The notes beneath the pieces are model-generated. The model was not told the origin of the DNA and did not search any database. It saw only the letters and a list, made by a program, of their open reading frames with translations. The position numbers and the translations under genes are program-made. Of a stretch of DNA of 64,000 bases, positions 6,086 to 60,200 are shown piece by piece. The DNA is from Octopus bimaculoides (Eukaryota): NCBI RefSeq assembly GCF_001194135.2, contig NC_068983.1, positions 167,962,514 to 168,026,513 of the forward strand, written 5' to 3'. Numbering within the stretch: position 1 is the stretch's first letter; each line of letters opens with the position of its first letter.

Positions 6086-6391
6086 CAACAACAGATTTAT
6101 GGGTCTCACCTAGCCTACCTGTCAATTACAGGTGTGTATGATGGTTCTCAATCAGGGGGTGAACTGCAGGTATACAACAAATTAGGATATTGTAAACATT
6201 TCCAATAAGTAGCTGACAGAGTTTACAATGTATTTCATCATAAGTAGTTTCTCAACTGATTTTGATTTCTTTACATCACCTTTGTTAACTTATAAACATA
6301 CATAGAAAAACAGTTCAACAACCAGCTGTATATAACATTACCTAAAACTGGTACACTGCACCAACTAAACACACTCACTCTCATACATATA

Positions 6392-7372
6392 TCATCATGA
6401 TCATCATCATTCAACGTCCGCTTTCTATGCTAGTATGGGTTGGACGGTTTGACTGAGGACTGGTGAACCAGATGGCTACACCAGACTCCAATCTGATCTG
6501 GCAGAGTTTCTATAACTGGATGCCCTTCTTAACGCCAACCACTCTGTGAGTGTAGTGGGTGCTTTTTACATGCCACCGGCACGAGGGCCAGTCCGGCAGT
6601 ACTGGTAATGGCCACGCTCAAATGGTGCTTTTTACGTGCCACTGGCACGGGAGCAAGACCACTGCTCTGGCAGTGATCCCGCTTGGATGGTGCTGTTAGC
6701 GCTCCACTGGCACGGGTGTCAGTCATTGAATTTGGTTCAGTTTTGATTGATCTCACTTGCCCCAACAGGTCTTCGCAAGCTGAGTTTAGTGTCCAATGAA
6801 GGAAGGTTGGCATGGGTGCCAGTCATCGAATTTGGTTCAATTTCAATTTCGATTTCACTTACCTCAACAGGTCTTCGCAAGCGGAGTTTAGCGTCCAATG
6901 AAGGAATGTTACGTGTAAGTGGGCTGGCTACATCCCTGGCAGAGGCCTTGGATTTTGGTCTCACTTGTCTTGCTGGGTCTTCTCATGCACAGCATATTTC
7001 CAAAGGTCTCGGTCACTAGTCATTGCCTCGGTGAGGCCTAATGTTCGAAGGTCGTGCTTCACCACCTCATCCCAGGTCTTCCTGGGTCTACCTCTTCCAC
7101 AGGTTCCCTCAACCGTGAGGCTATGGCACTTTTTGACACAGCTATCCTCATCCATTCTCGCCAAATGACCATACCAGTGCAATCGTCTCTCTTGCACACC
7201 ACATCTGATGCTTCTTAGGTCCAACTTTTATCTCAAGGTACTACACTCTGTCGAGTATGCACACTAACATTACAAATCCATTGGAGCATACTGGCTTCAT
7301 TCCTTGCAAGCTTATGCATGTCCTCAGCAGTCACGACCCAGGTTTCACTGCCATGTAACATGGCTGTTCATA
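6392..7372 (-). mobile_element. 5'-truncated RTE-clade LINE (ORF C-terminus plus 3' UTR)
   Basis: RRLHWYGHLARMDEDSCVKKCHSLTVEGTCGRGRPRKTWDEVVKHDLRTLGL is a typical RTE C-terminus. Followed by UTR and (GAT)n tail. Confidence 0.9.
6714..6905. repeat. About 100-bp tandem duplication inside the RTE 3' UTR
   Basis: gggtgtcagtcattgaatttggttca...tccaatgaaggaa begins at 6714 and recurs at 6814. Confidence 0.8.
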
Positions 7373-12869: not shown

Positions 12870-13466
12870 ATTATATATATATATATATATATAGTAATAA
12901 TATATATATATAGTAATAATAATAATAATCCAAAGATGGAATTTATAAATATTTTAATGTTAAAATATTCATAAATTCCATCCATGGACTATTATTATTA
13001 CTACTACTACTACATTTATCCTATGTTATATCAGCACAGCTTGGTGCAAACCCATAAAATTACTGTTGAATGTTGGATTCAGAAATATAAGCCTTTAAAA
13101 CCTTTCAAATGTGTCATGGGTTAAAACAAAATTAAAATTCTCATTTCCAATCATCATCATCATCATCGTTTAACGTCCGCTTTCCATGCTAGCATGGGTT
13201 GGACGATTTGACTGAGGACTGGCAAGCCAGAAGGCTGCACCAGGTTCCAGGCAAAAGTTAATCACTGAGATGGTCGTGGAGGGGTGGCAGTGATGGTAAT
13301 TTCACCTACTTCTTTAATATTCTCTCCCATCTACTCCATCACTCTCTCTCTCTCTCCATACCTCTCACAACTATAAATCTGTTCATCTCCTTTTAGTTCA
13401 CCTTTTTAGGCATTTTCTTTCTGTCTCTCATTTATTCTCCTTTAATTACAGGGAAAATAAAAATTT

Positions 13467-13692
13467 ACATGAAAACAGGTTAAGTCATAAAGCAACCTCT
13501 CTAGTGCTGGTACCCTGAAAAAAAGTAGGCAATACACCCCTGTAAAGCAACTGGTATTAAGAAGGGCATCAAGTGAAAGAAAGCAAGTTCAAGCAGACAT
13601 TGGAGCATGATGCAGTCCCCTGACTTGTTGGATCCTGTTGAATTATTCAGCCTATGCCTGCGTAGAAGGTGAAAGTTAAATGATGACAAGGA
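13467..13692 (+). repeat. Left arm of a 226-bp inverted repeat flanking the DENND5 exon (RTE-tail-like sequence)
   Basis: Manual alignment to the reverse complement of 14552-14777 gives 9 substitutions and no indels. Confidence 0.95.
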
Positions 13693-14079
13693 ATAAATGC
13701 ACTAAATCATTTATTCCCTAGGGCTTTGATGCATTTATGAATAGAACTATTTCACCATCATTTGGTTATTTTTATATATTCTTAGTATAATAGGTACATA
13801 CCTTTTTTTTTTTCCTTTTTTTATAAGCAATGTACAACAAAATTAATTCTTTTGGGAAATAACTTCCAGAAAACATATCCCTCAAATATCAGTCTATAGG
13901 AATACAATTACATTCAATAAATCTATTAGTATTTAAAGTTTCTAGCATGAGATGACCAAACTTCAGCAAAATTGTTAATCACAAGTGGTTTTAATTATAT
14001 TTGTTAACAAAAATTAATACTATTTTCAATATTGAAATACATCAGAAAAACACATTTGTAATGAAGTTTATTAACTTAC

Positions 14080-14189
14080 CATTCCAACAGCTTCTTTGTC
14101 GAATGGATTCCATGGCACAGTTTCTGGGTAATGTGCTAAAACTTTGGATTTGTATGGTCTTCTCAATGGAGCACAATGAAGATTATCTC
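14080..14189 (-). CDS. DENND5: Internal coding exon (110 nt, phase 1 to 0) of a DENN domain-containing protein 5 (Rab6-interacting protein 1/pinstripe) gene, uDENN region
   Basis: Minus strand reads tttttttttttccacattacag|GA GAT AAT ... GGA ATG|gtaagt, with canonical splice sites. Translation (G)[36 protein letters not shown] closely matches the DENND5A/B and fly pinstripe N-terminal segment as recalled (vertebrate ...[30 protein letters not shown]). Confidence 0.95.
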
Positions 14190-14551
14190 CTGTAATGTGG
14201 AAAAAAAAAAACTATATGAAACACAACAGATTTTCTTAAGATAAAACATTTACGGTTGTCAATCTTAATACATACAGATCAGCTTACATAGATGAAAGAA
14301 AAATAAAGAAACAATTTCTACCTTACAAAAGATGACTTGGTTTGATATGAATCCCAAGCAAAATCTTTTTAACTGAACCCTAATTTCAAGTTGAATTCAA
14401 ATAATAACTAAAGCTGACACAAGCGATAACTCTAAGGGATAATAATTCTGCAGTAAATGCTAACAGTTGATAATTTGTAATCAATAATCTTAAAATAACT
14501 CAGCACTGACAGAATTAATTGATAATTTTTGGATGCTTGAATGAAGCCTGA

Positions 14552-14777
14552 TCCTTGTCATCATCTAACTTTCACCTTCTACGCAGGCATAGGCTGAACA
14601 ATTCAACAGGATCCAACGAGTCAGGGGACTGCATCATGCTCCAATGTCTGCTTGAACTTGCTTTCTTTCATTTGATGCCCTTCCTAATAGCAGCTGCTTT
14701 ACAGGGGTGTATTGCCTACTTTTTTTCAGGGTACCAGCACTAGAGAGGTTGCTTTATGACTTAACCTGTCCTCATGT
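14552..14777 (-). repeat. Right arm of the 226-bp inverted repeat
   Basis: See left arm. The supplied ORFs 13501-13689(-) and 14555-14743(+) translate almost identically. Confidence 0.95.
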
Positions 14778-22381: not shown

Positions 22382-23820
22382 TATAATGTCCACTTTGACA
22401 TGTTTGTACGAGTCAGATTTTCTATGGCCAGACACCCTTACTGTTGCCAACCTCCTGTGATCAAGCAAGGTGATATTTTCCCATTCATCGCTTGCATGAC
22501 AATCATGCTTCTTCACATCCATTGCATGATGTCAAGTATTTGCATGCATGCACACACGGTAGGATTTTTCAGTTTCCATCTACCAAATTCACTCAGAAGA
22601 CTTTGATTGGCCTGAAACCATAGCAGAAGACACTTGCCCAGTGAGCCATGCAATGGGACTGAACCCAAAACCATGTAGTTGAGAAGCAAAACTTCTTAAC
22701 TATACAACAATGCCTTTAACTTTGAATGCAGAAATTCTCAGACTAGCTAAACATTAATGCAATTAGTATATATAGAGAGAGAACAGAGAGAAAGGAATGG
22801 AGAGAACGGGGAGGGCAGGGAGGGCAGGGAGAGAGAGAGAGAGAGATGAGGTATACCCAAGGTTTTTGCAGTAGAGAACAAAACTGAGAAATTCCCTCTT
22901 CACAACAACACAATTACAGGTAACATTTTATATTGTTTAGCTCAAGTCTACAGAAAGGATGAGATATGAAAAACTCATAATAGCATCCCAGTTTCTCTCT
23001 CTCATCATCATCATCATCATCATCGTTTAACGTCCGCTTTCCATGCTAGCATGGGTTGGACGATTTGACTGAGGACTGGTGAAACCGGATGGCAACACCA
23101 GGCTCCAGTCTGATTTGGCAGAGTTTCTACAGCTGGATGCCCTTCCTAACGCCAACCACTCAGATATTCAACCACACAAATATTCAAACCAACTAATTGA
23201 AGACACATACTGATAGCTTGATAACTAAAGTAACAGGAAATTATCAATTGCTCATGAATAGATCAGCAATCTTGCAGTACCAAACTGCAGCAAACTCAAC
23301 TTAGCTTCTTTCTTAAATAATGAGAGTGCATTTCTGATGCAAATTTGATAGCCAAATGAATGTATTCTATTTACGTTTAGCTAACCTCATTTTCCCATTT
23401 GTACAGCTAATCAAAGGGTTCCAATGAGAAACCAAAAGAATAAAACTATTTAATATATAGCACAGCTAGAAACGGCCATGGCAGCTGACAGTAGCTAAAG
23501 GCAGTTGTGGTTGCCAAGAGACATCATATAGAAGATTTCTGCAGGGAAAGGTTAACTGACCCATCACACTCAGGTAAAGCAGACAAGCTAAGGCACAAAT
23601 CACTTGTTATCCTGAGATACTGAAGAATTAAATAAACAGATTATTAAGGCAGAACATCTGCAGCAGGATACACTTGCTGTTACCAACCTTCAGCTGATTC
23701 CAAAGAAGGTAATATTTCACCATGGCCAAACATGTTTTCATAGAATATTAAAAATGAATGACAGTGTATGACAGTTACAATCATTTACAGTTATCATGCA
23801 TTGTCTACACAAGTAAAGAT

Positions 23821-24399: not shown

Positions 24400-25020
24400 C
24401 AAACATGAACGCACAGTCAAGACCCAGGAAGAAATGGGATGAGGTGGTGATGCATAATCTTTGAATGTTGGGCCTCACAGAGGTAACGATAAGTGACCGA
24501 GACATTTGGCGAAATGTTGTGCTTGAAAAGACCCATCAAGCCAAGTGAAATCAGTTGTAGCCATTAGTAGTGTCATGTAAATGGGCCCCTTGAAATTGTA
24601 ATCATGGCTGTTACCAGTAGCATGATCTTGAAATGTTGAGCCTCACGGAGGCAAGGGATGAGGTGGTGAAGCATGATCTTTGAATGTTGGGCTTCACAGA
24701 AGTGATGACGAGTGACCGAGACCGTGGCGATATGCAGTGCTTGAGAAGACTTGTCAAGCCAAACGAAACCAGTCATGACCATTAGCAGTGTCATGTAAAT
24801 GGCACCAGTGAAATCGTAGTCACGGCTGTAGCCAGTGTCATGCAAATGGCACCTGTGCTGGTGGCACATAAAAAAACACTCATTACGCTCTGAGTGGTTG
24901 GCATTAGGAAAGGCATCCAACTGTAGAAACCATGCCAAATCAGACTGGAACCTGGTGCAACTCTCTGGATTACCAGTTCCAGTTAAACTGTGTCTAACTG
25001 CTGGCATGGGTTGAATGGTT
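24400..25020 (+). mobile_element. RTE 3' end fragments with locally duplicated ORF-end segments
   Basis: gatgaggtggtga..gcatgatctttgaatgttgggc occurs at about 24438 and 24657 with a partial copy between, followed by RTE UTR. Confidence 0.7.
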
Positions 25021-25243
25021 TGACATGGAGCTGGCCAACTGGGAAGCTGTTCAGGTTTCAATTGTCTGTTGTGGCATGGCTTCTACAACTGGATGCCCTT
25101 CCAAATGCCAACCACTTTACAAAAGTGTGTTGGGTGCTTTTTGCATGCAACACTGCCACAGATGTATCTTATGTGACACTGGCACCTGCAAAGCACAAGC
25201 TTGTATGTGTGGATGGCATATTACCACAACCCCCAGTCCTTTG

Positions 25244-26295: not shown

Positions 26296-28078
26296 ATGGT
26301 TGAGGAAAATACTTCAAGAGAAGCAAATAATAATAGAAAACTTGATTGTGTAGAGAAGACAAATAACAGTATTTTTGAAGGGAGCTATTTTTGTTATTCT
26401 CAACAAGGTTAACCATATCCAGCAGTTTGATGATTACCAATAACTGCCTGTTAGACAAGATAGTATATAACACTGTCTCTGCAGCTGGGAAAACTGTGAC
26501 AGAAAAAGAAGAAAAACAAAAAGAGGTGGAGAGAAACAAATGCAAATTGCAGCGCAGTGCATTTTACATGACACTCAAATAAGAATGGTTCATCAAGTAG
26601 ACTGAGCGAAAGAGAAAGAAAGCAAGATTACAACTGTTGCTATCGTAGCAATACAAAAGCCTGTTACCAAGGAGAATAGCTGCAAGCTGGCTGACGTACA
26701 GCCTGGAGTATTGATGAGGTGTAAACAATCTAATGTCCTCATAAAAGAGTTGACATATCATCTAGGAATGAATGGGAGATCCTATAAATTTCAGGAATGC
26801 ATTGTTAATATTACATCTTCAATTCCAACAACTCGGAATTTTATTAAACACAAGATTTTTAGAGACAATGTTCCACCACAAGAAAATTCATTATCCTTTT
26901 GTATCAATCTGCCCAACTTATACTGATTCTTTAGAAACAACTTAACATTGTATATAAAGAAAAAAAAAAAACTTTTTTAATAGAATAAGACACGCTTGAG
27001 TGACAACTTATTCTGCTGAAGCTAATTCTATAGAAAGTTTTAAACAATTGCGGCTGGAGATTGTGAGACAAATGTGAAGAATTTCTCATAGAATCTTAGC
27101 AAACATAGTATAACAAACACCAGTATATTACCATTTGGAAACTAAACCCTACGGTAACCAGGAATATTCTTTAGTTTACAATTGTAAAAGAAAACCCTGA
27201 CAGGATCTTTTATATGAAATCAGTTTGAAAATTATTGTTTCGTGTCCCAGTACATGACATCTTGGGATGACCAAAATCTTGTGAGTGTATTTGGTAGACA
27301 GATATCGAAATAAGTCCATCATGTGTATGTGTGTCTGTGAGTGTGTGTGTGTGTGTGTGCGCGCGCACACACACACACACACACTCAGACATTGTCATGA
27401 CATTATAGGATAATTATGAGTGCCACTGTCATAAGAGCAGTGTCATTTGTTTCCAACTTTCCATGAAAACTTAATGGGAAATATTTTGTTGTTTGGAAAC
27501 AAAAATGGATTGGTGACAAGGACATCCAACTGTAGAAAACCTGTCTTAATAAATTCTGTCTGACCCTTGCAAGCGGGGAAAAGTGGATAATAAAACAAGG
27601 ATAATTATGTCTAAGAAAATCAAAAAAAGGAATCAGAGCCAGTAAAGACGAAGGTAAACAATTGATGCATTGAATTATGGGTAGCCTGCATTGATTTCTA
27701 CAAATTCACTAATTATATTAGGGTTTAACTCACAACCTGAAAAATATTGTAATCGGTAGAACTGTATGCAAGTCTTATTTCATGAAGACAATTCGTGTAT
27801 AGTTCTGCAAATTATATTGATTCTAGAACGGTTGTGCTGATGAGAACTCTNNNNNNNNNNNNNNNNNNNNNNNNNNNNNNNNNNNNNNNNNNNNNNNNNN
27901 NNNNNNNNNNNNNNNNNNNNNNNNNNNNNNNNNNNNNNNNNNNNNNNNNNNNNNNNNNNNNNNNNNNNNNNNNNNNNNNNNNNNNNNNNNNNNNNTTGTA
28001 ATCGGTAGAACTGTATGCAAGTCTTATTTCATGAAGACAATTCGTGTATAGTTCTGCAAATTATATTGATTCTAGAAC

Positions 28079-28150
28079 GGTTGTGCTGATGAGAACTCTG
28101 ATGTTGTTACCTAAGTAAAACTTTAATGTTCGAAACCACGGTACACAACT
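28079..28150 (+). ncRNA. Type I hammerhead ribozyme motif with long loop II and short near-palindromic stem III
   Basis: GGTTGTG-CTGATGA-GAAC(31 nt)GTTC-GAAA-CCACGG-TA/CACAACT. Predicted cleavage after 28143. Confidence 0.8.
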
Positions 28151-40919: not shown

Positions 40920-42420
40920 TGATTTTTTTTACATGCCACCAGCATGCACTTGACTTAACAGTTCCTCTTAAGCAAAGCACATCGCCAAAGGTCTGGGTCA
41001 CTAGTCATTGCCTCTGTGAGGTTCAAAGTTCGAAGGTCATGCTTCACCACCTTGTCCCATGTCTTCCTGGGTCTACCTCTACCACAGATTCCATCCACAG
41101 AGATTGGCATTTCTTTACACAACTGTCCTCGTCCATACGCATCACATGGACATGCCAGCACAGTTGTCTCTCTTGTCCAGCACATCTGATTCTTCTTATG
41201 CCTAACTGTTCTCTCAAGATGCTTACACTCTAACGAACTCACACACTGACATTGCACATCCAGCGAAGCATACTGGCTTCATTTCTTTCATGCCTACACA
41301 TATCCTCAGTTGTCACAGTCCATGTTTCACTGCCATGCAGTATAGCTGTTCACACACAGGCATCAAACAATCTGCTTTTCACTCTGAGGGAGAGGCCTTT
41401 TGTTGCCAGAGGGGGTAAGAGCTCTCTGAATTTTGCCCAGCCTAATCTTATTCTCACAGCTATACTCTCAGAACAACCACCTCCACTACTAACCTGGTCA
41501 ACTAGATACCGGAAGCTATCTACTACCTCTAGCTTGCACCCCTGGCAGTTGATGGAGTCTATTTTCCATGCATGTTCAGCATTTATTAAGCTTGTGCACC
41601 TTCTACATACAAAAGTTAGTTTCCTTGTTAACCTTCCTCTGACGTTGCTGCACCTTTTGTGTGTCCAAAGCTTACACAGGGTGCATCTTATGGAGTTTCT
41701 ACCTATACCTTTTCTACAGATTGAGCAGGGACATCTACCTGAGGGGATTTGTGATTTGTCTGCCTTCCTACTTATTAAGACTTTGGGTTTTATTAGGTTA
41801 ACTCTAAGGCCCTTCAATTCTTGATCTTGTTTCCATACCTGGAACTTCTTCTCTAGATCAGGTAGTGATTCAGCTTTAAGAGCAAGGTCATCAGCATAGA
41901 GGAGCTCCCAGGGGCAACCTGTCTTAAATTCCTTTGTTATTGCCTAGAGGACTATGATGAACAAGAGGGGACTGAGCACTGATCCTTGGTGAACCCCTGT
42001 GTGTACTCTGAATTCTTTGCTGTACTCACTGCCAACTCTCACCTTACAGGTAGCATCCCTGTACAAGGCTTGTACAGCTCTTACAAACCACTCATCTATC
42101 CCTAGTTTCCGCATTGACCACTAGATAATGGACTAGGGGACAGTCAAAAGCTTTCTCCAAGTCAACAAAAGCCAAGTACAGGGGTTTATCTTTGGCTAGG
42201 TATTTCTCCTGCAGAAATATAGCATCTCATCTAGACTAACTCTCTCCCTGATTAGTTGGGCTAGGATTCCCTCCATAACTTTCATCACCTGATCCAACAA
42301 TTTGATACCTCTGTAATTATTTCAATCTAAGGCACCACCTTTACCTTTGTAGCAGTTAACTGTGATGCTGCTACACCAGTCAATTGAGTAGGGCTCTTTC
42401 ATGAGCCACCTGATTTACAA
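40920..42420 (-). mobile_element. 5'-truncated RTE-clade LINE (RT and C-terminal region)
   Basis: NYRGIKLLDQVMK, LLYADDLAL, GLRVNLIKPKVL, CSICRKGIGRNSIRCTLCKLWTHKRCS and GRGRPRKTWDKVVKHDL. Confidence 0.92.
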
Positions 42421-46505: not shown

Positions 46506-46775
46506 ATGGAAGATGTTTGTAAGCCACTCAAGAACACACAAAAAATTAGTTTCACTTCAACATTTAAATTTCATCTGTGTCAAAATATTTTGTCGCTTTG
46601 AAACCGCGACCTGTTCACTGACAAAACTTTGTGCTGCATCATTCTTGTGAAGTTTTGTCAGTGAACAGGTCGGTGTTTCAAAGCGACGAAATATTTTGAC
46701 ACAGATGAAATTTAAATGTTGAAGTGAAACTAACAGCATTTGTGTCTTCTTGAATGGTTTACAAACATCTTCCAT
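46506..46775. repeat. Long palindrome/foldback (about 125-bp arms, 20-nt spacer)
   Basis: atggaagatgtttg...ctgttcactgacaaaactt (46506-46629), spacer 46630-46649, then aagttttgtcagtgaacag...caaacatcttccat (46650-46775). Confidence 0.9.
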
Positions 46776-58499: not shown

Positions 58500-60200
58500 T
58501 CATTATTATTTAACTTCTGCTTTCCATGCTGGCCTGGGCTGGATGGTTTGACTTAGGACTGGCAAGCCAGGAGGCTGCTCCAGGCTCCAATCTGATCTTG
58601 CAAGATTTCTTCAGCTGGATGTCCTTCCAAACACCAACCACTTAAAGTGAAGTGGGTGCTTTTTATGTGCCACCCACATGGGAGCCAGTCAGGCAGGACT
58701 GGCATCAAGGATGCTCGGATGGTCCTTTTTATGTGCTACCAGCACAGGTGCCAGTCAGGCGGCACTGGCATTGGCCATGACTATGATTTCACTTGACTCA
58801 ACAGGTCTTCTCAAGCACAGAATATTGCCTGGTGATTAAAGGGTACTTTTAAATGGGCCAGTTATGCAACACTGGCATCAGCCACAGTTACATTCTCCCT
58901 TGACTTGCCAGGCCTTCTCAATCACAGCATACCTCCAAAGTTCTCGGTCACTTGTCATTGCCTCTAAAAAGCCCAACATCCAAAAGTCAAGCTTGACCAC
59001 CTCATTCCATGTCTTCCTGGGTCTACCTCTTCCACAAGTTTCTTCAACGATTAGGGTGTGACACTTCACACAGCTGTCCTCATCCATACATAACACATGA
59101 CCACACCAGTGCAGTCATCTCTCTGATGCTTCTTAGTCCAACTTTTCTCTTAAGATGCTCACACTCTGTCATCGATGCACACTGACACTACACACATCCA
59201 GTGAATCATACTAGTTTCATTTCTTTCAAGCCTACGCATGTCTTCAGCAGTCATGGTCCATGTTTTACTGCCATGTAGCATGACAGTTCACACACATGCA
59301 TCATACAGTCTACCTTACATTCTGAGCGAGAGGCCCTTTGTCACCAGAAGAGGTAGAACCTTTCTGAACTTTACCCAAGCTATTCTTATTCTAGTGGCAA
59401 AGCTGTAAGAGCATCCACCCCCGCTACTGACTTGGTCACCTGGGTAACAGAAGCTATCAACTATTTCTAGTTTCTCTCCCTGGCATGTGATGGAATCTGT
59501 TTTCTGTACATCTTCGGTGTTTATTGCCCCTGTGCATCTACCACACACAAAAACTATCTTCCTGGTTAACCTTCATCTGATATTGCTGCACCTCTTATGT
59601 GTCCATAGCTTACACTGAGTACATCTTATGGAGTTTCTACCTATGTCTTTTCTACAGATCGAGCAGGCCCATCTACCTGAAGGGGTTTGTGATGTGTTCG
59701 CCTTCCTACTTACCAGGACTTTGGTTTTTGCTAGATTAACTCGGAGGCTCTTCGATTCTAGACCTTGCTTCCACACCCGAAACTTCATTTCTGGTTCTGG
59801 TAGTAACTCAGCAATTAGAGCAAGGTCGTCAGCATAGAGGAACTCCCAGGGGCAGCTTGTCATGAATTCCTCTGTTATTGCCTGGAAGACTCTGATAAGA
59901 GAGGACTGAGGTTTATCCATGGTGAACTTGTACTTCTACCCGGAATTCTTCATTATACTCGTTGCCAACCCTCACCTTACTGACAGCATTCCTGTACAGC
60001 TCTTACCAACCACTTGTCTATCCCTTTTTTACTACATTGATCACCAGATAAGTGATCAGGGGGCTCTGTCAAAGGCTTTCTCCAAGTCAAAAGCCAAACA
60101 CAGAGGTTTATATTTGGTTAGGTATTTCTCCTGCAGTTGCCTTACCAGAAATATAGCATCAGGCACAAAACCAAACTGCAACTTCAAACGTAGTAAACAT
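58500..60200 (-). mobile_element. 5'-truncated RTE-clade LINE with 3' UTR and (GAT/AAT) tail
   Basis: CPWEFLYADDLALIAE, CSICRKDIGRNSIRCTQCKLWTHKRCS, ATRIRIAWVKFR and GRGRPRKTWNEVV. Confidence 0.92.

What the first reader, a model, noticed from the sequence alone, without database searches (positions are those of the whole stretch)
13467..14777. 96%-identical 226-bp inverted repeat brackets the DENND5 exon, with mismatches favouring the sense-strand duplex
Seen: arms at 13467-13692 and 14552-14777 enclose an ~860-nt loop containing the 110-nt exon. They appear much closer to each other than to other RTE-tail copies here. Of 9 mismatches, 6 become G-U wobbles in the DENND5 pre-mRNA, 2 are A-C and 1 is C-C; on the opposite strand the 6 would be A-C. 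Known: such duplexes are ADAR substrates, A-C mismatches are favoured editing sites, and flanking inverted repeats drive back-splicing or skipping. Coleoid cephalopods edit extensively. Skipping 110 nt would shift the frame. Inference: a structure that may control editing, circRNA formation or NMD-coupled skipping. The 6 of 8 transition bias is only suggestive.
Basis: partly seen in the sequence, partly recalled or inferred. Interest (0 to 1): 0.75.

Follow-up and report, generated by a model that had tools for sequence, protein, structure and literature searches.

The report
Young inverted repeat pair flanking DENND5 exon
Two nearly identical 226-bp copies of a retrotransposon tail sit in opposite orientation either side of one coding exon of an octopod DENND5 gene; they will almost certainly fold into a long RNA hairpin, but nothing found here shows this is more than an ordinary, recent genomic accident of a well-known kind.

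Summary
The arms lie at 13467-13692 and 14552-14777, are 226 nt long with 9 mismatches and no gaps, and enclose an 859-nt loop. The loop holds a 110-nt minus-strand exon with good splice sites. On the gene's sense strand the mismatches are 6 G·U, 2 A·C and 1 C·C. The exon is 100% identical to residues 33-68 of a protein annotated DENND5B in Argonauta hians (uDENN-DENN-dDENN-PLAT-RUN).

The arms are the 3' ~210 nt of a LINE-tail repeat family with about 15 older copies in the window. They are sister copies and far closer to each other than any other genuine repeat pair in the window. Both stop at the same 5' point and share the same degenerate tail, and neither has a target-site duplication. 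I therefore favour one truncated insertion plus a local inverted copy over two independent insertions.

The functional reading is not supported beyond generic plausibility. The G·U bias is not significant (p=0.29) and is worth about 10 of about 426 kcal/mol. It is also the direction expected from transcription-linked mutation bias. The exon has strong splice sites, and 110 nt is short for circularisation. A distant orthologous exon lacks any such repeat. No genome-wide, cross-species or RNA data could be reached. The most likely role is a passive ADAR hyper-editing substrate.

The parts
13467..13692 (+). Arm 1. A LINE-3'-tail-derived repeat fragment in element-sense orientation on the + strand, so it is antisense within the DENND5 pre-mRNA. 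Its 3' tail ATGATGACAAGGA faces the exon. It lies in the intron downstream of the exon and is transcribed after it.
   Evidence: inverted repeat; family homology covers arm positions 15-225, tail orientation
14552..14777 (-). Arm 2. Sister copy of arm 1, in element-sense orientation on the - strand, so it is sense within the pre-mRNA. Its tail also faces the exon. It lies in the intron upstream of the exon and is transcribed first.
   Evidence: equidistant from all outgroup copies
13693..14551 (-). The 859-nt loop: 362 nt of upstream intron, the 110-nt exon, and 387 nt of downstream intron.
14080..14189 (-). DENND5 coding exon (residues 33-68 of P0001, in the uDENN region). 110 nt, so skipping it shifts the frame. 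Acceptor AG at 14191-14190, donor GT at 14079-14078.
   Evidence: borders conserved in ORFs from many distant animals
14671..14671 (-). Sense-strand A opposite C (13573) in the stem. This is an A.C mismatch and a predicted preferred ADAR site (inference only).
13626..13626 (-). Sense-strand A opposite C (14618) in the stem. This is the second A.C mismatch and a predicted preferred ADAR site (inference only).
13690..13717 (.). Small 10-bp hairpin (GGAATAAATG / CATTTATTCC, 8-nt loop) abutting the inner end of arm 1. It forms in both minimum-free-energy folds and extends the stem region.

Best explanation
This is a recent, probably lineage-specific pair of co-terminal fragments of a LINE (RTE-like) 3'-tail repeat, in opposite orientation either side of one constitutive-looking DENND5 exon. 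The most likely origin is a single 5'-truncated insertion followed by a local inverted copy. That copy arose either at DNA level, or by retro-copying of the host pre-mRNA, in which arm 2 is in sense orientation and presents the LINE tail. The alternative origin is two independent retrotranspositions.

In the pre-mRNA, arm 2 is transcribed first, then the exon, then arm 1 about 1.1 kb later. The two arms should zip into a 226-bp near-perfect duplex that loops out the exon with about 370 nt of intron on each side. The expected consequence is promiscuous ADAR binding and A-to-I hyper-editing of the intronic arms, with at most a minor, probably slightly deleterious, increase in exon skipping followed by NMD. 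In short, it is a passive by-product of repeat dynamics and not a regulatory device.

Shown: the anatomy, the gene identity, the family relationship, the sister status of the arms, the predicted fold, and the lack of significance of the mismatch bias. Inferred: formation of the duplex in vivo, editing, the origin by local duplication, and neutrality.
For: The repeat and its mismatches are confirmed. The stem dominates the minimum-free-energy and centroid folds on both strands, and the stem alone is about -426 kcal/mol.

The family is a LINE 3' tail. Sense copies lie 214-376 nt downstream of ORF2 C-termini at 58880->58503 and 6963->6403 and end in (ATG)n.

On origin: a profile built from non-arm copies aligns only to arm positions 15-225, which correspond to model positions 265-473 of 507. 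The arms are therefore the 3' part of a longer element. Both stop at the identical 5' point after 14 shared non-family nucleotides, and both carry the same degenerate tail ATGATGACAAGGA. There is no convincing target-site duplication and no empty-site paralogue for either arm. Given two copies placed at random in 64 kb, the chance of lying within about 1.1 kb of each other is about 3% (own arithmetic).

On age and divergence: both arms are equally distant from every outgroup copy, and changes fall on both arms. Divergence is JC 0.041. With the O. vulgaris repeat calibration (JC 0.065 = 18 My, PMC13282606) this suggests roughly 6 My since the arms separated, if there has been no gene conversion.

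On function: young repeats with nearby inverted copies are the main A-to-I targets across metazoans, including octopus (PMC9989829). Octopus editing is mostly in intronic and 3'UTR hairpins (PMC9699675). The distant orthologous exon has no long flanking inverted repeat.
Against: No RNA data, no genome-wide copy census and no sister-species locus could be obtained. Editing, neutrality, age and the duplication origin are therefore all untested. A short, young subfamily whose natural unit is this 226-bp module would also explain the shared termini. RTE-type elements often lack clear target-site duplications, so their absence is weak evidence. The 6:2 bias and the near-symmetric placement (362 vs 387 nt from the exon) are in the direction expected for a selected structure, even if neither is significant.
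Confidence: 0.6

Rival explanations
1. Origin rival: the arms are two independent retrotranspositions of a young, short subfamily whose full unit is this ~226-bp module. They landed by chance on either side of the exon. The functional consequences are the same as in the best explanation.
For: Octopus genomes hold many recently active SINE and LINE families: 900 SINE families with insertions <=2% from consensus in O. vulgaris, and a SINE/LINE burst at JC 0.065 (PMC13282606). Each arm would be about 2% from a common source. The family is very abundant locally, with about 17 copies in 64 kb.
Against: No third copy of this subfamily occurs in 64 kb. Both arms share the same 5' end point within a longer family model and the same degenerate tail. 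No target-site duplications were found. The arms have no tRNA-like head or promoter module. Proximity of two random copies is about a 3% event (own arithmetic).
Confidence: 0.3
2. One reading: the duplex is a selected regulatory element that tunes DENND5 output. It would work through ADAR-sensitive loop-out skipping of the 110-nt exon (frameshift, then NMD), with sense-strand pairing preserved by selection.
For: The stem brackets a frame-shifting exon at near-symmetric distances. Six of 8 transitions are G.U on the sense strand. The sense-strand fold is more stable, -591.8 vs -567.5 kcal/mol. Loop-out skipping by inverted Alu pairs is documented (PMC13019027).
Against: The bias is not significant, with p=0.29 two-sided. 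It is energetically trivial, 10.5 of 426 kcal/mol, and is expected from mutational asymmetry. The exon has strong splice sites, whereas the Alu effect is confined to exons with a weak 3' splice site and is small (PMC13019027). The pair is young. A distant orthologue lacks any such repeat.
Confidence: 0.08
3. The inverted repeat drives back-splicing of the exon into a 110-nt circular RNA.
For: Flanking complementary sequences within a few hundred nt of both splice sites are the canonical circRNA determinant (PMC4201285).
Against: Exons <=400 nt circularised poorly or not at all in the ZKSCAN1 system (PMC4201285). [quoted passage not shown]
Confidence: 0.04
4. One arm is an assembly artefact of a gapped short-read scaffold, for example a misplaced or collapsed repeat copy.
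For: The window is a draft with eight N runs and at least one obvious scaffolding artefact, a 100% direct repeat straddling the gap at 27851-27995.
Against: There are nine mismatches, not perfect identity. The 859-nt spacer is unique sequence holding a correctly oriented conserved exon. No N run lies within about 6.5 kb.
Confidence: 0.04
5. The hairpin is a source of endogenous siRNAs, like the hpRNA loci of Drosophila, and is processed by Dicer instead of, or as well as, being edited.
For: A long near-perfect intramolecular duplex. This rests on general knowledge of hpRNA loci, not on any test here.
Against: No small-RNA data were available. The hairpin is intronic with a large loop. No such pathway evidence for cephalopods was found in the papers read.
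Confidence: 0.03

Closest known systems
Inverted Alu pairs (IRAlus) flanking exons in primates: ADAR hyper-editing substrates, loop-out exon skipping (e.g. the TBXT AluY-AluSx1 pair) and circRNA biogenesis (PMC13019027, PMC4201285)
   Same: Two same-family retroelement copies of ~200-300 nt lie in opposite orientation in the introns either side of one exon, within 1 kb. They are predicted to form a very stable stem that loops out the exon.
   Different: The element is a LINE (RTE-like) 3'-tail fragment in an octopod, not a 7SL-derived SINE. The arms are 96% identical and co-terminal, which points to a local duplication and not two insertions. No editing, skipping or circle has been observed. 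The exon is short and has strong splice sites.
Repeat-derived intramolecular dsRNA as the bulk A-to-I editing substrate across Metazoa, including Octopus bimaculoides (PMC9989829; octopus intronic and 3'UTR hairpins, PMC9699675)
   Same: A young repeat with a nearby inverted copy inside a transcribed intron.
   Different: This is only a prediction for this locus; no editing calls were available.
Site-selective ADAR substrates formed by an exon and an intronic editing-complementary sequence, the conserved recoding sites of cephalopods, insects and mammals
   Same: An intronic sequence participates in a duplex within a neuronal-type gene.
   Different: Here the two intronic arms pair with each other, not with the exon. 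The exon sits in the loop, so recoding of this exon by this structure is not expected.
Solnick-type hairpin-sequestered exons (own knowledge: Solnick 1985; Solnick and Lee 1987)
   Same: An exon enclosed in the loop of a long hairpin can be skipped.
   Different: Those were engineered constructs. The in vivo effect depends on stem length and on the kinetics of transcription and splicing, neither of which was tested here.

Membership tests
Exon-flanking intronic inverted-repeat pair (IRAlu-like) | Two copies of one repeat family in opposite orientation | tested here: met
Exon-flanking intronic inverted-repeat pair (IRAlu-like) | Arms in the introns on either side of the same exon, within about 1 kb | tested here: met
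   362 and 387 nt from the exon
Exon-flanking intronic inverted-repeat pair (IRAlu-like) | Predicted stable stem-loop in the pre-mRNA | tested here: met
   MFE -591.8 kcal/mol with the full stem in the MFE and centroid structures; stem alone -425.8
Exon-flanking intronic inverted-repeat pair (IRAlu-like) | A-to-G clusters in the arms in RNA versus DNA | not testable with these tools
   No reads or transcript assemblies of this species could be reached
Exon-flanking intronic inverted-repeat pair (IRAlu-like) | Arm-dependent exon skipping or back-splicing | not testable with these tools
   No RNA data available
circRNA-producing exon | Exon long enough to circularise efficiently (>=~500 nt good, <=400 nt poor in ZKSCAN1 minigenes) | tested here: not met
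   The exon is 110 nt; the threshold comes from PMC4201285
LINE (RTE-like) 3'-tail repeat / tail-sharing SINE | 3' end in a short microsatellite tail, colinear with the 3' UTR of a LINE ORF2 | tested here: met
   (ATG)n tails; family copies 214-376 nt downstream of ORF2 stops at 58880 and 6963
LINE (RTE-like) 3'-tail repeat / tail-sharing SINE | The partner LINE belongs to the RTE clade | tested here: inconclusive
   Only weak RVT_1 and PHD hits on ORF fragments. The GRGRPRKTW...DR.LW C-terminal motif resembles BovB/RTE from memory only.
LINE (RTE-like) 3'-tail repeat / tail-sharing SINE | tRNA-, 5S- or 7SL-derived pol III head (needed to call it a SINE) | tested here: not met
   The arms begin 14 nt upstream of family model position 265. 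ARAGORN finds no tRNA-like sequence in the window, and there is no Rfam hit.
LINE (RTE-like) 3'-tail repeat / tail-sharing SINE | Target-site duplication marking an independent insertion | tested here: not met
   Only an AT-rich 6-mer for arm 1 and nothing for arm 2. This is weak evidence because RTE-type insertions often lack clear duplications.
Conserved structured regulatory RNA element | Presence and covariation in related species | tested here: inconclusive
   The only orthologous genomic fragments reached (L001, L002; exon 74% nt identity, introns unalignable) have no long flanking inverted repeat. No close relative could be examined.
DENND5 (Rab6-interacting protein 1) gene | uDENN-DENN-dDENN plus RUN-PLAT-RUN architecture of the protein containing this exon | tested here: met
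   P0001 is 100% identical over the exon; Pfam domains; NCBI name DENND5B

The most novel reading that the evidence does not exclude
The pair is a recently evolved, lineage-specific dsRNA clamp that makes inclusion of a frame-critical DENND5 exon depend on ADAR activity. Binding, editing or unwinding of the 226-bp stem would set the ratio of productive to NMD-targeted transcripts. In an ectotherm with extreme neural editing, this could couple the dosage of a Rab GEF to temperature or neuronal state. The sense-strand G.U bias would then be the first trace of selection.
Probability: 0.04. Interest if true: 0.55.

Novelty: new member of a known kind. Interest (0 to 1): 0.2.

Why it matters
If the ordinary reading holds, this is one more example that repeat-rich cephalopod introns generate long intramolecular dsRNA. 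That dsRNA is the bulk substrate of their ADAR activity, and young inverted pairs can arise next to essential exons without obvious harm. Two things would make it more interesting. The first is arm-dependent skipping, which would be a natural invertebrate counterpart of the hominoid Alu loop-out mechanism. The second is proof that the second arm arose by local copying and not by transposition, which would document a mechanism that builds exon-bracketing hairpins.

Tried and rejected
What led nowhere:
The index even missed P0001, which contains the exon exactly, so these negatives say nothing.
2. Exact-product look-ups of the two arm ORFs and three exon-overlapping ORFs found nothing on record.
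3. The A. hians DENND5B locus exists in the collection but no DNA was returned, because the gene range exceeds the limit.
4. The Logan contigs L001 and L002 and L004 come from distant species. L001 and L002 could not be aligned in the introns. L004 was not analysed.
5. DNA pattern scans were empty: viral contigs 0 hits, metagenome contigs 0 hits for an arm-specific 23-mer, and one chance hit in a 57% GC bacterial contig for the family core.
6. Pfam and PDB searches with the 36-aa exon alone were uninformative.
7. No paper holds both DENND5 and octopus.

Considered and rejected:
- One-sided A-to-G hypermutation, i.e. a retrocopy of an edited RNA. Polarised changes fall on both arms and in mixed directions.
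- CpG decay as the source of the bias. Only one of the nine sites (13626/14618, a C/T difference) lies in a CpG context; none of the six A/G sites does.
- Clustering of the mismatches (P=0.56).
- A foldback or MITE element spanning 13467-14777. The loop holds an ancient conserved exon.
- Gene conversion between two older insertions as the reason for the shared ends. There is no residual family homology outside either arm.
- A known structured RNA in the interval.

Full report
**Observation.** The arms are 13467-13692 and 14552-14777, 226 nt each, 96% complementary, with 859 nt between them. A base-by-base comparison gives 9 mismatches and no gaps, and similarity falls to random immediately outside all four ends. 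On the minus strand the mismatches are six G·U, two A·C and one C·C; on the plus strand they are six A·C, two G·U and one G·G. The enclosed exon runs 14189->14080 on the minus strand and is 110 nt long. It is preceded by an 11-T + CC tract and CAG and followed by GTAAGT. It encodes [36 protein letters not shown]. No assembly gap lies within about 6.5 kb.

**Gene identity.** Pfam and PDB could not place a 36-residue peptide, and the word-indexed protein search found nothing. The exhaustive HMMER search returned 139 hits. The best is P0001 (1339 aa), 100% identical across residues 33-68. NCBI names it DENN domain-containing 5B isoform X4 of Argonauta hians, and it carries uDENN, DENN, dDENN, PLAT and RUN domains. 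tblastn of P0001 against the window finds only this one exon, so the flanking introns exceed 14 kb and 49 kb. ORFs from many distant animals share the same exon borders, so this is an old, constitutive-type exon. The window is from an octopod; the species cannot be fixed, because the library holds one representative per 50% cluster.

**The repeat family.** nhmmer with an arm finds about 15 further copies in the 64 kb. By blastn they are 67-79% identical to the arm. In element-sense orientation the family ends in an (ATG)n microsatellite. Sense copies lie 214 and 376 nt downstream of two LINE ORF2 stops (58880 and 6963), whose C-termini read GRGRPRKTW...DR.LW. The RTE clade itself was not established: there are only weak RVT_1 and PHD hits. 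Arm 1 is element-sense on the plus strand and arm 2 on the minus strand, so both tails point inward to the exon.

**How unusual the pair is.** Of 88 repeat pairs >=100 nt in the window, the median identity is 75%. Only this pair and a 100% direct repeat straddling the N gap at 27851-27995 (a scaffolding artefact) reach 95%. Both arms are equally distant from every outgroup copy, so they are true sister copies.

**Origin.** A profile built only from non-arm copies aligns to arm positions 15-225, which correspond to model positions 265-473 of 507. The arms are thus the 3' ~210 nt of a longer element, preceded by 14 nt that do not match the family. Both arms share those 14 nt, the same end point, and the same degenerate tail ATGATGACAAGGA.

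Independent 5'-truncated insertions would not be expected to stop at the same base. There is no tRNA-like head, no convincing target-site duplication and no empty-site paralogue. Two random copies in 64 kb would lie within 1.1 kb only about 3% of the time (own arithmetic).

I therefore favour (about 0.6) one truncated insertion plus a local inverted copy. One attractive route is retro-copying of the DENND5 pre-mRNA itself, in which arm 2 is in sense orientation and presents the LINE tail. A short young subfamily with these natural termini remains possible (about 0.3) and needs a genome-wide census.

Divergence is JC 0.041. With the O. vulgaris calibration (JC 0.065 = 18 My, 0.09 = 25 My; PMC13282606) this is roughly 6 My, barring gene conversion. 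That is younger than the O. vulgaris / O. bimaculoides split quoted there (13-33 My), so I predict that at least one arm is lineage-specific.

**The mismatch bias.** Six of eight transitions favouring the sense strand gives p=0.145 one-sided and 0.29 two-sided. The stem alone is -425.8 kcal/mol on the sense strand and -415.3 on the other, against -443.4 for a perfect duplex. For the whole 1361-nt region the values are -591.8 and -567.5. A 2.5% difference in a stem many times longer than the 30-40 nt that suffices for intron pairing (PMC4201285) offers no handle for selection.

The bias also has a purely mutational explanation. Any C>T or A>G change on the sense strand converts a Watson-Crick pair to G·U in the sense RNA, whereas G>A or T>C gives A·C. 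Transcription-associated asymmetry (own knowledge: Green et al. 2003) favours the former. The sense strand of this window does show G>C (skew +0.050 +/- 0.016) and G+T = 0.514 +/- 0.004, although orientation bias of the repeats could contribute to that.

Outgroup polarisation is low-confidence. It places changes on both arms: arm 1 at 13550, 13560 and 13645; arm 2 at 13554, 13573 and 13679. There is no one-sided hypermutation, only one of the nine sites (13626/14618) lies in a CpG context, and there is no significant clustering (P=0.56).

**Likely behaviour.** Arm 2 is transcribed first, then the exon, and arm 1 follows about 1.1 kb later. The duplex should form before either very long intron is removed (inference). 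Long near-perfect intronic duplexes from young repeats with a nearby inverted copy are the main A-to-I substrates across animals, including octopus (PMC9989829). In octopus most editing lies in intronic and 3'UTR hairpins (PMC9699675). The two sense-strand A·C mismatches (A at 14671 and at 13626) are the predicted preferred sites.

Circularisation is unlikely. Exons <=400 nt circularised poorly or not at all in minigenes (PMC4201285), and octopus circRNAs are low overall.

Loop-out skipping is possible but probably small. In the human Alu survey, inverted pairs also flank very many constitutive exons. The difference in predicted stability between pairs flanking skipped and constitutive exons is small (d = -0.12), and the correlation between stability and skipping holds only for exons with a weak 3' splice site. 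The splice sites here are strong.

The orthologous exon in a distant species (L001/L002) has only short low-complexity inverted matches around it, so the exon does not need a clamp.

**What could not be done.** No genome of this or a sister species, no reads and no transcripts were reachable.

**Verdict.** The regulatory interpretation has no positive support. The only mildly unusual feature is the co-terminal, sister-copy nature of the arms, which suggests local copying instead of two separate transpositions.

Noticed in passing
window 27747-27850 and 27996-28099: A 104-bp, 100% identical direct repeat sits immediately on either side of the N run 27851-27995. It looks like a gap-closure or scaffolding artefact, i.e. 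overlapping contig ends that were not merged.
   Followed up: no
window 46506-46775: A 270-bp interval (46506-46775) that aligns to its own reverse complement at 85.6% identity over a 278-column gapped alignment, i.e. a palindrome with no spacer. Its origin is unknown.
   Followed up: no
window 24850-24992 and 24999-25168: Two older copies of the same LINE-tail family lie in opposite orientation, only 6 nt apart. This shows that tight inverted pairs of this family recur locally.
   Followed up: partly
window 13150-13250 versus 23007-23108 and 6391-6544: A different, moderately young subfamily of the same tail family (90-92% between copies). The 13150-13250 fragment lies about 216 nt outside arm 1 in the orientation of arm 2, so it could compete weakly for pairing with arm 1.
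   Followed up: partly
window 58880-59920, 6963-7100 and 40957-41817 (- strand): LINE ORF2 remnants with a weak RVT_1 hit, a PHD/C1-like zinc finger and a GRGRPRKTW...DR.LW C-terminus. The PHD finger between the RT and the C-terminus may help classify the partner LINE.
   Followed up: partly
window 12911-13006: An AT-rich 47-nt-arm palindrome with a 2-nt spacer gives sub-threshold miRNA-family hits (mir-3047 at 26 bits against a gathering score of 53). This is probably a chance effect of low complexity.
   Followed up: no
window 13690-13717: A 10-bp hairpin (GGAATAAATG / CATTTATTCC) directly abuts the inner end of arm 1 and overlaps its last 3 nt.
   Followed up: no
tool behaviour: The word-indexed protein search reported no candidate for a query containing 36 residues that are identical to P0001. 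P0001 is in the same collection as a cluster representative. Negatives from that tool for short queries should not be trusted.
   Followed up: partly
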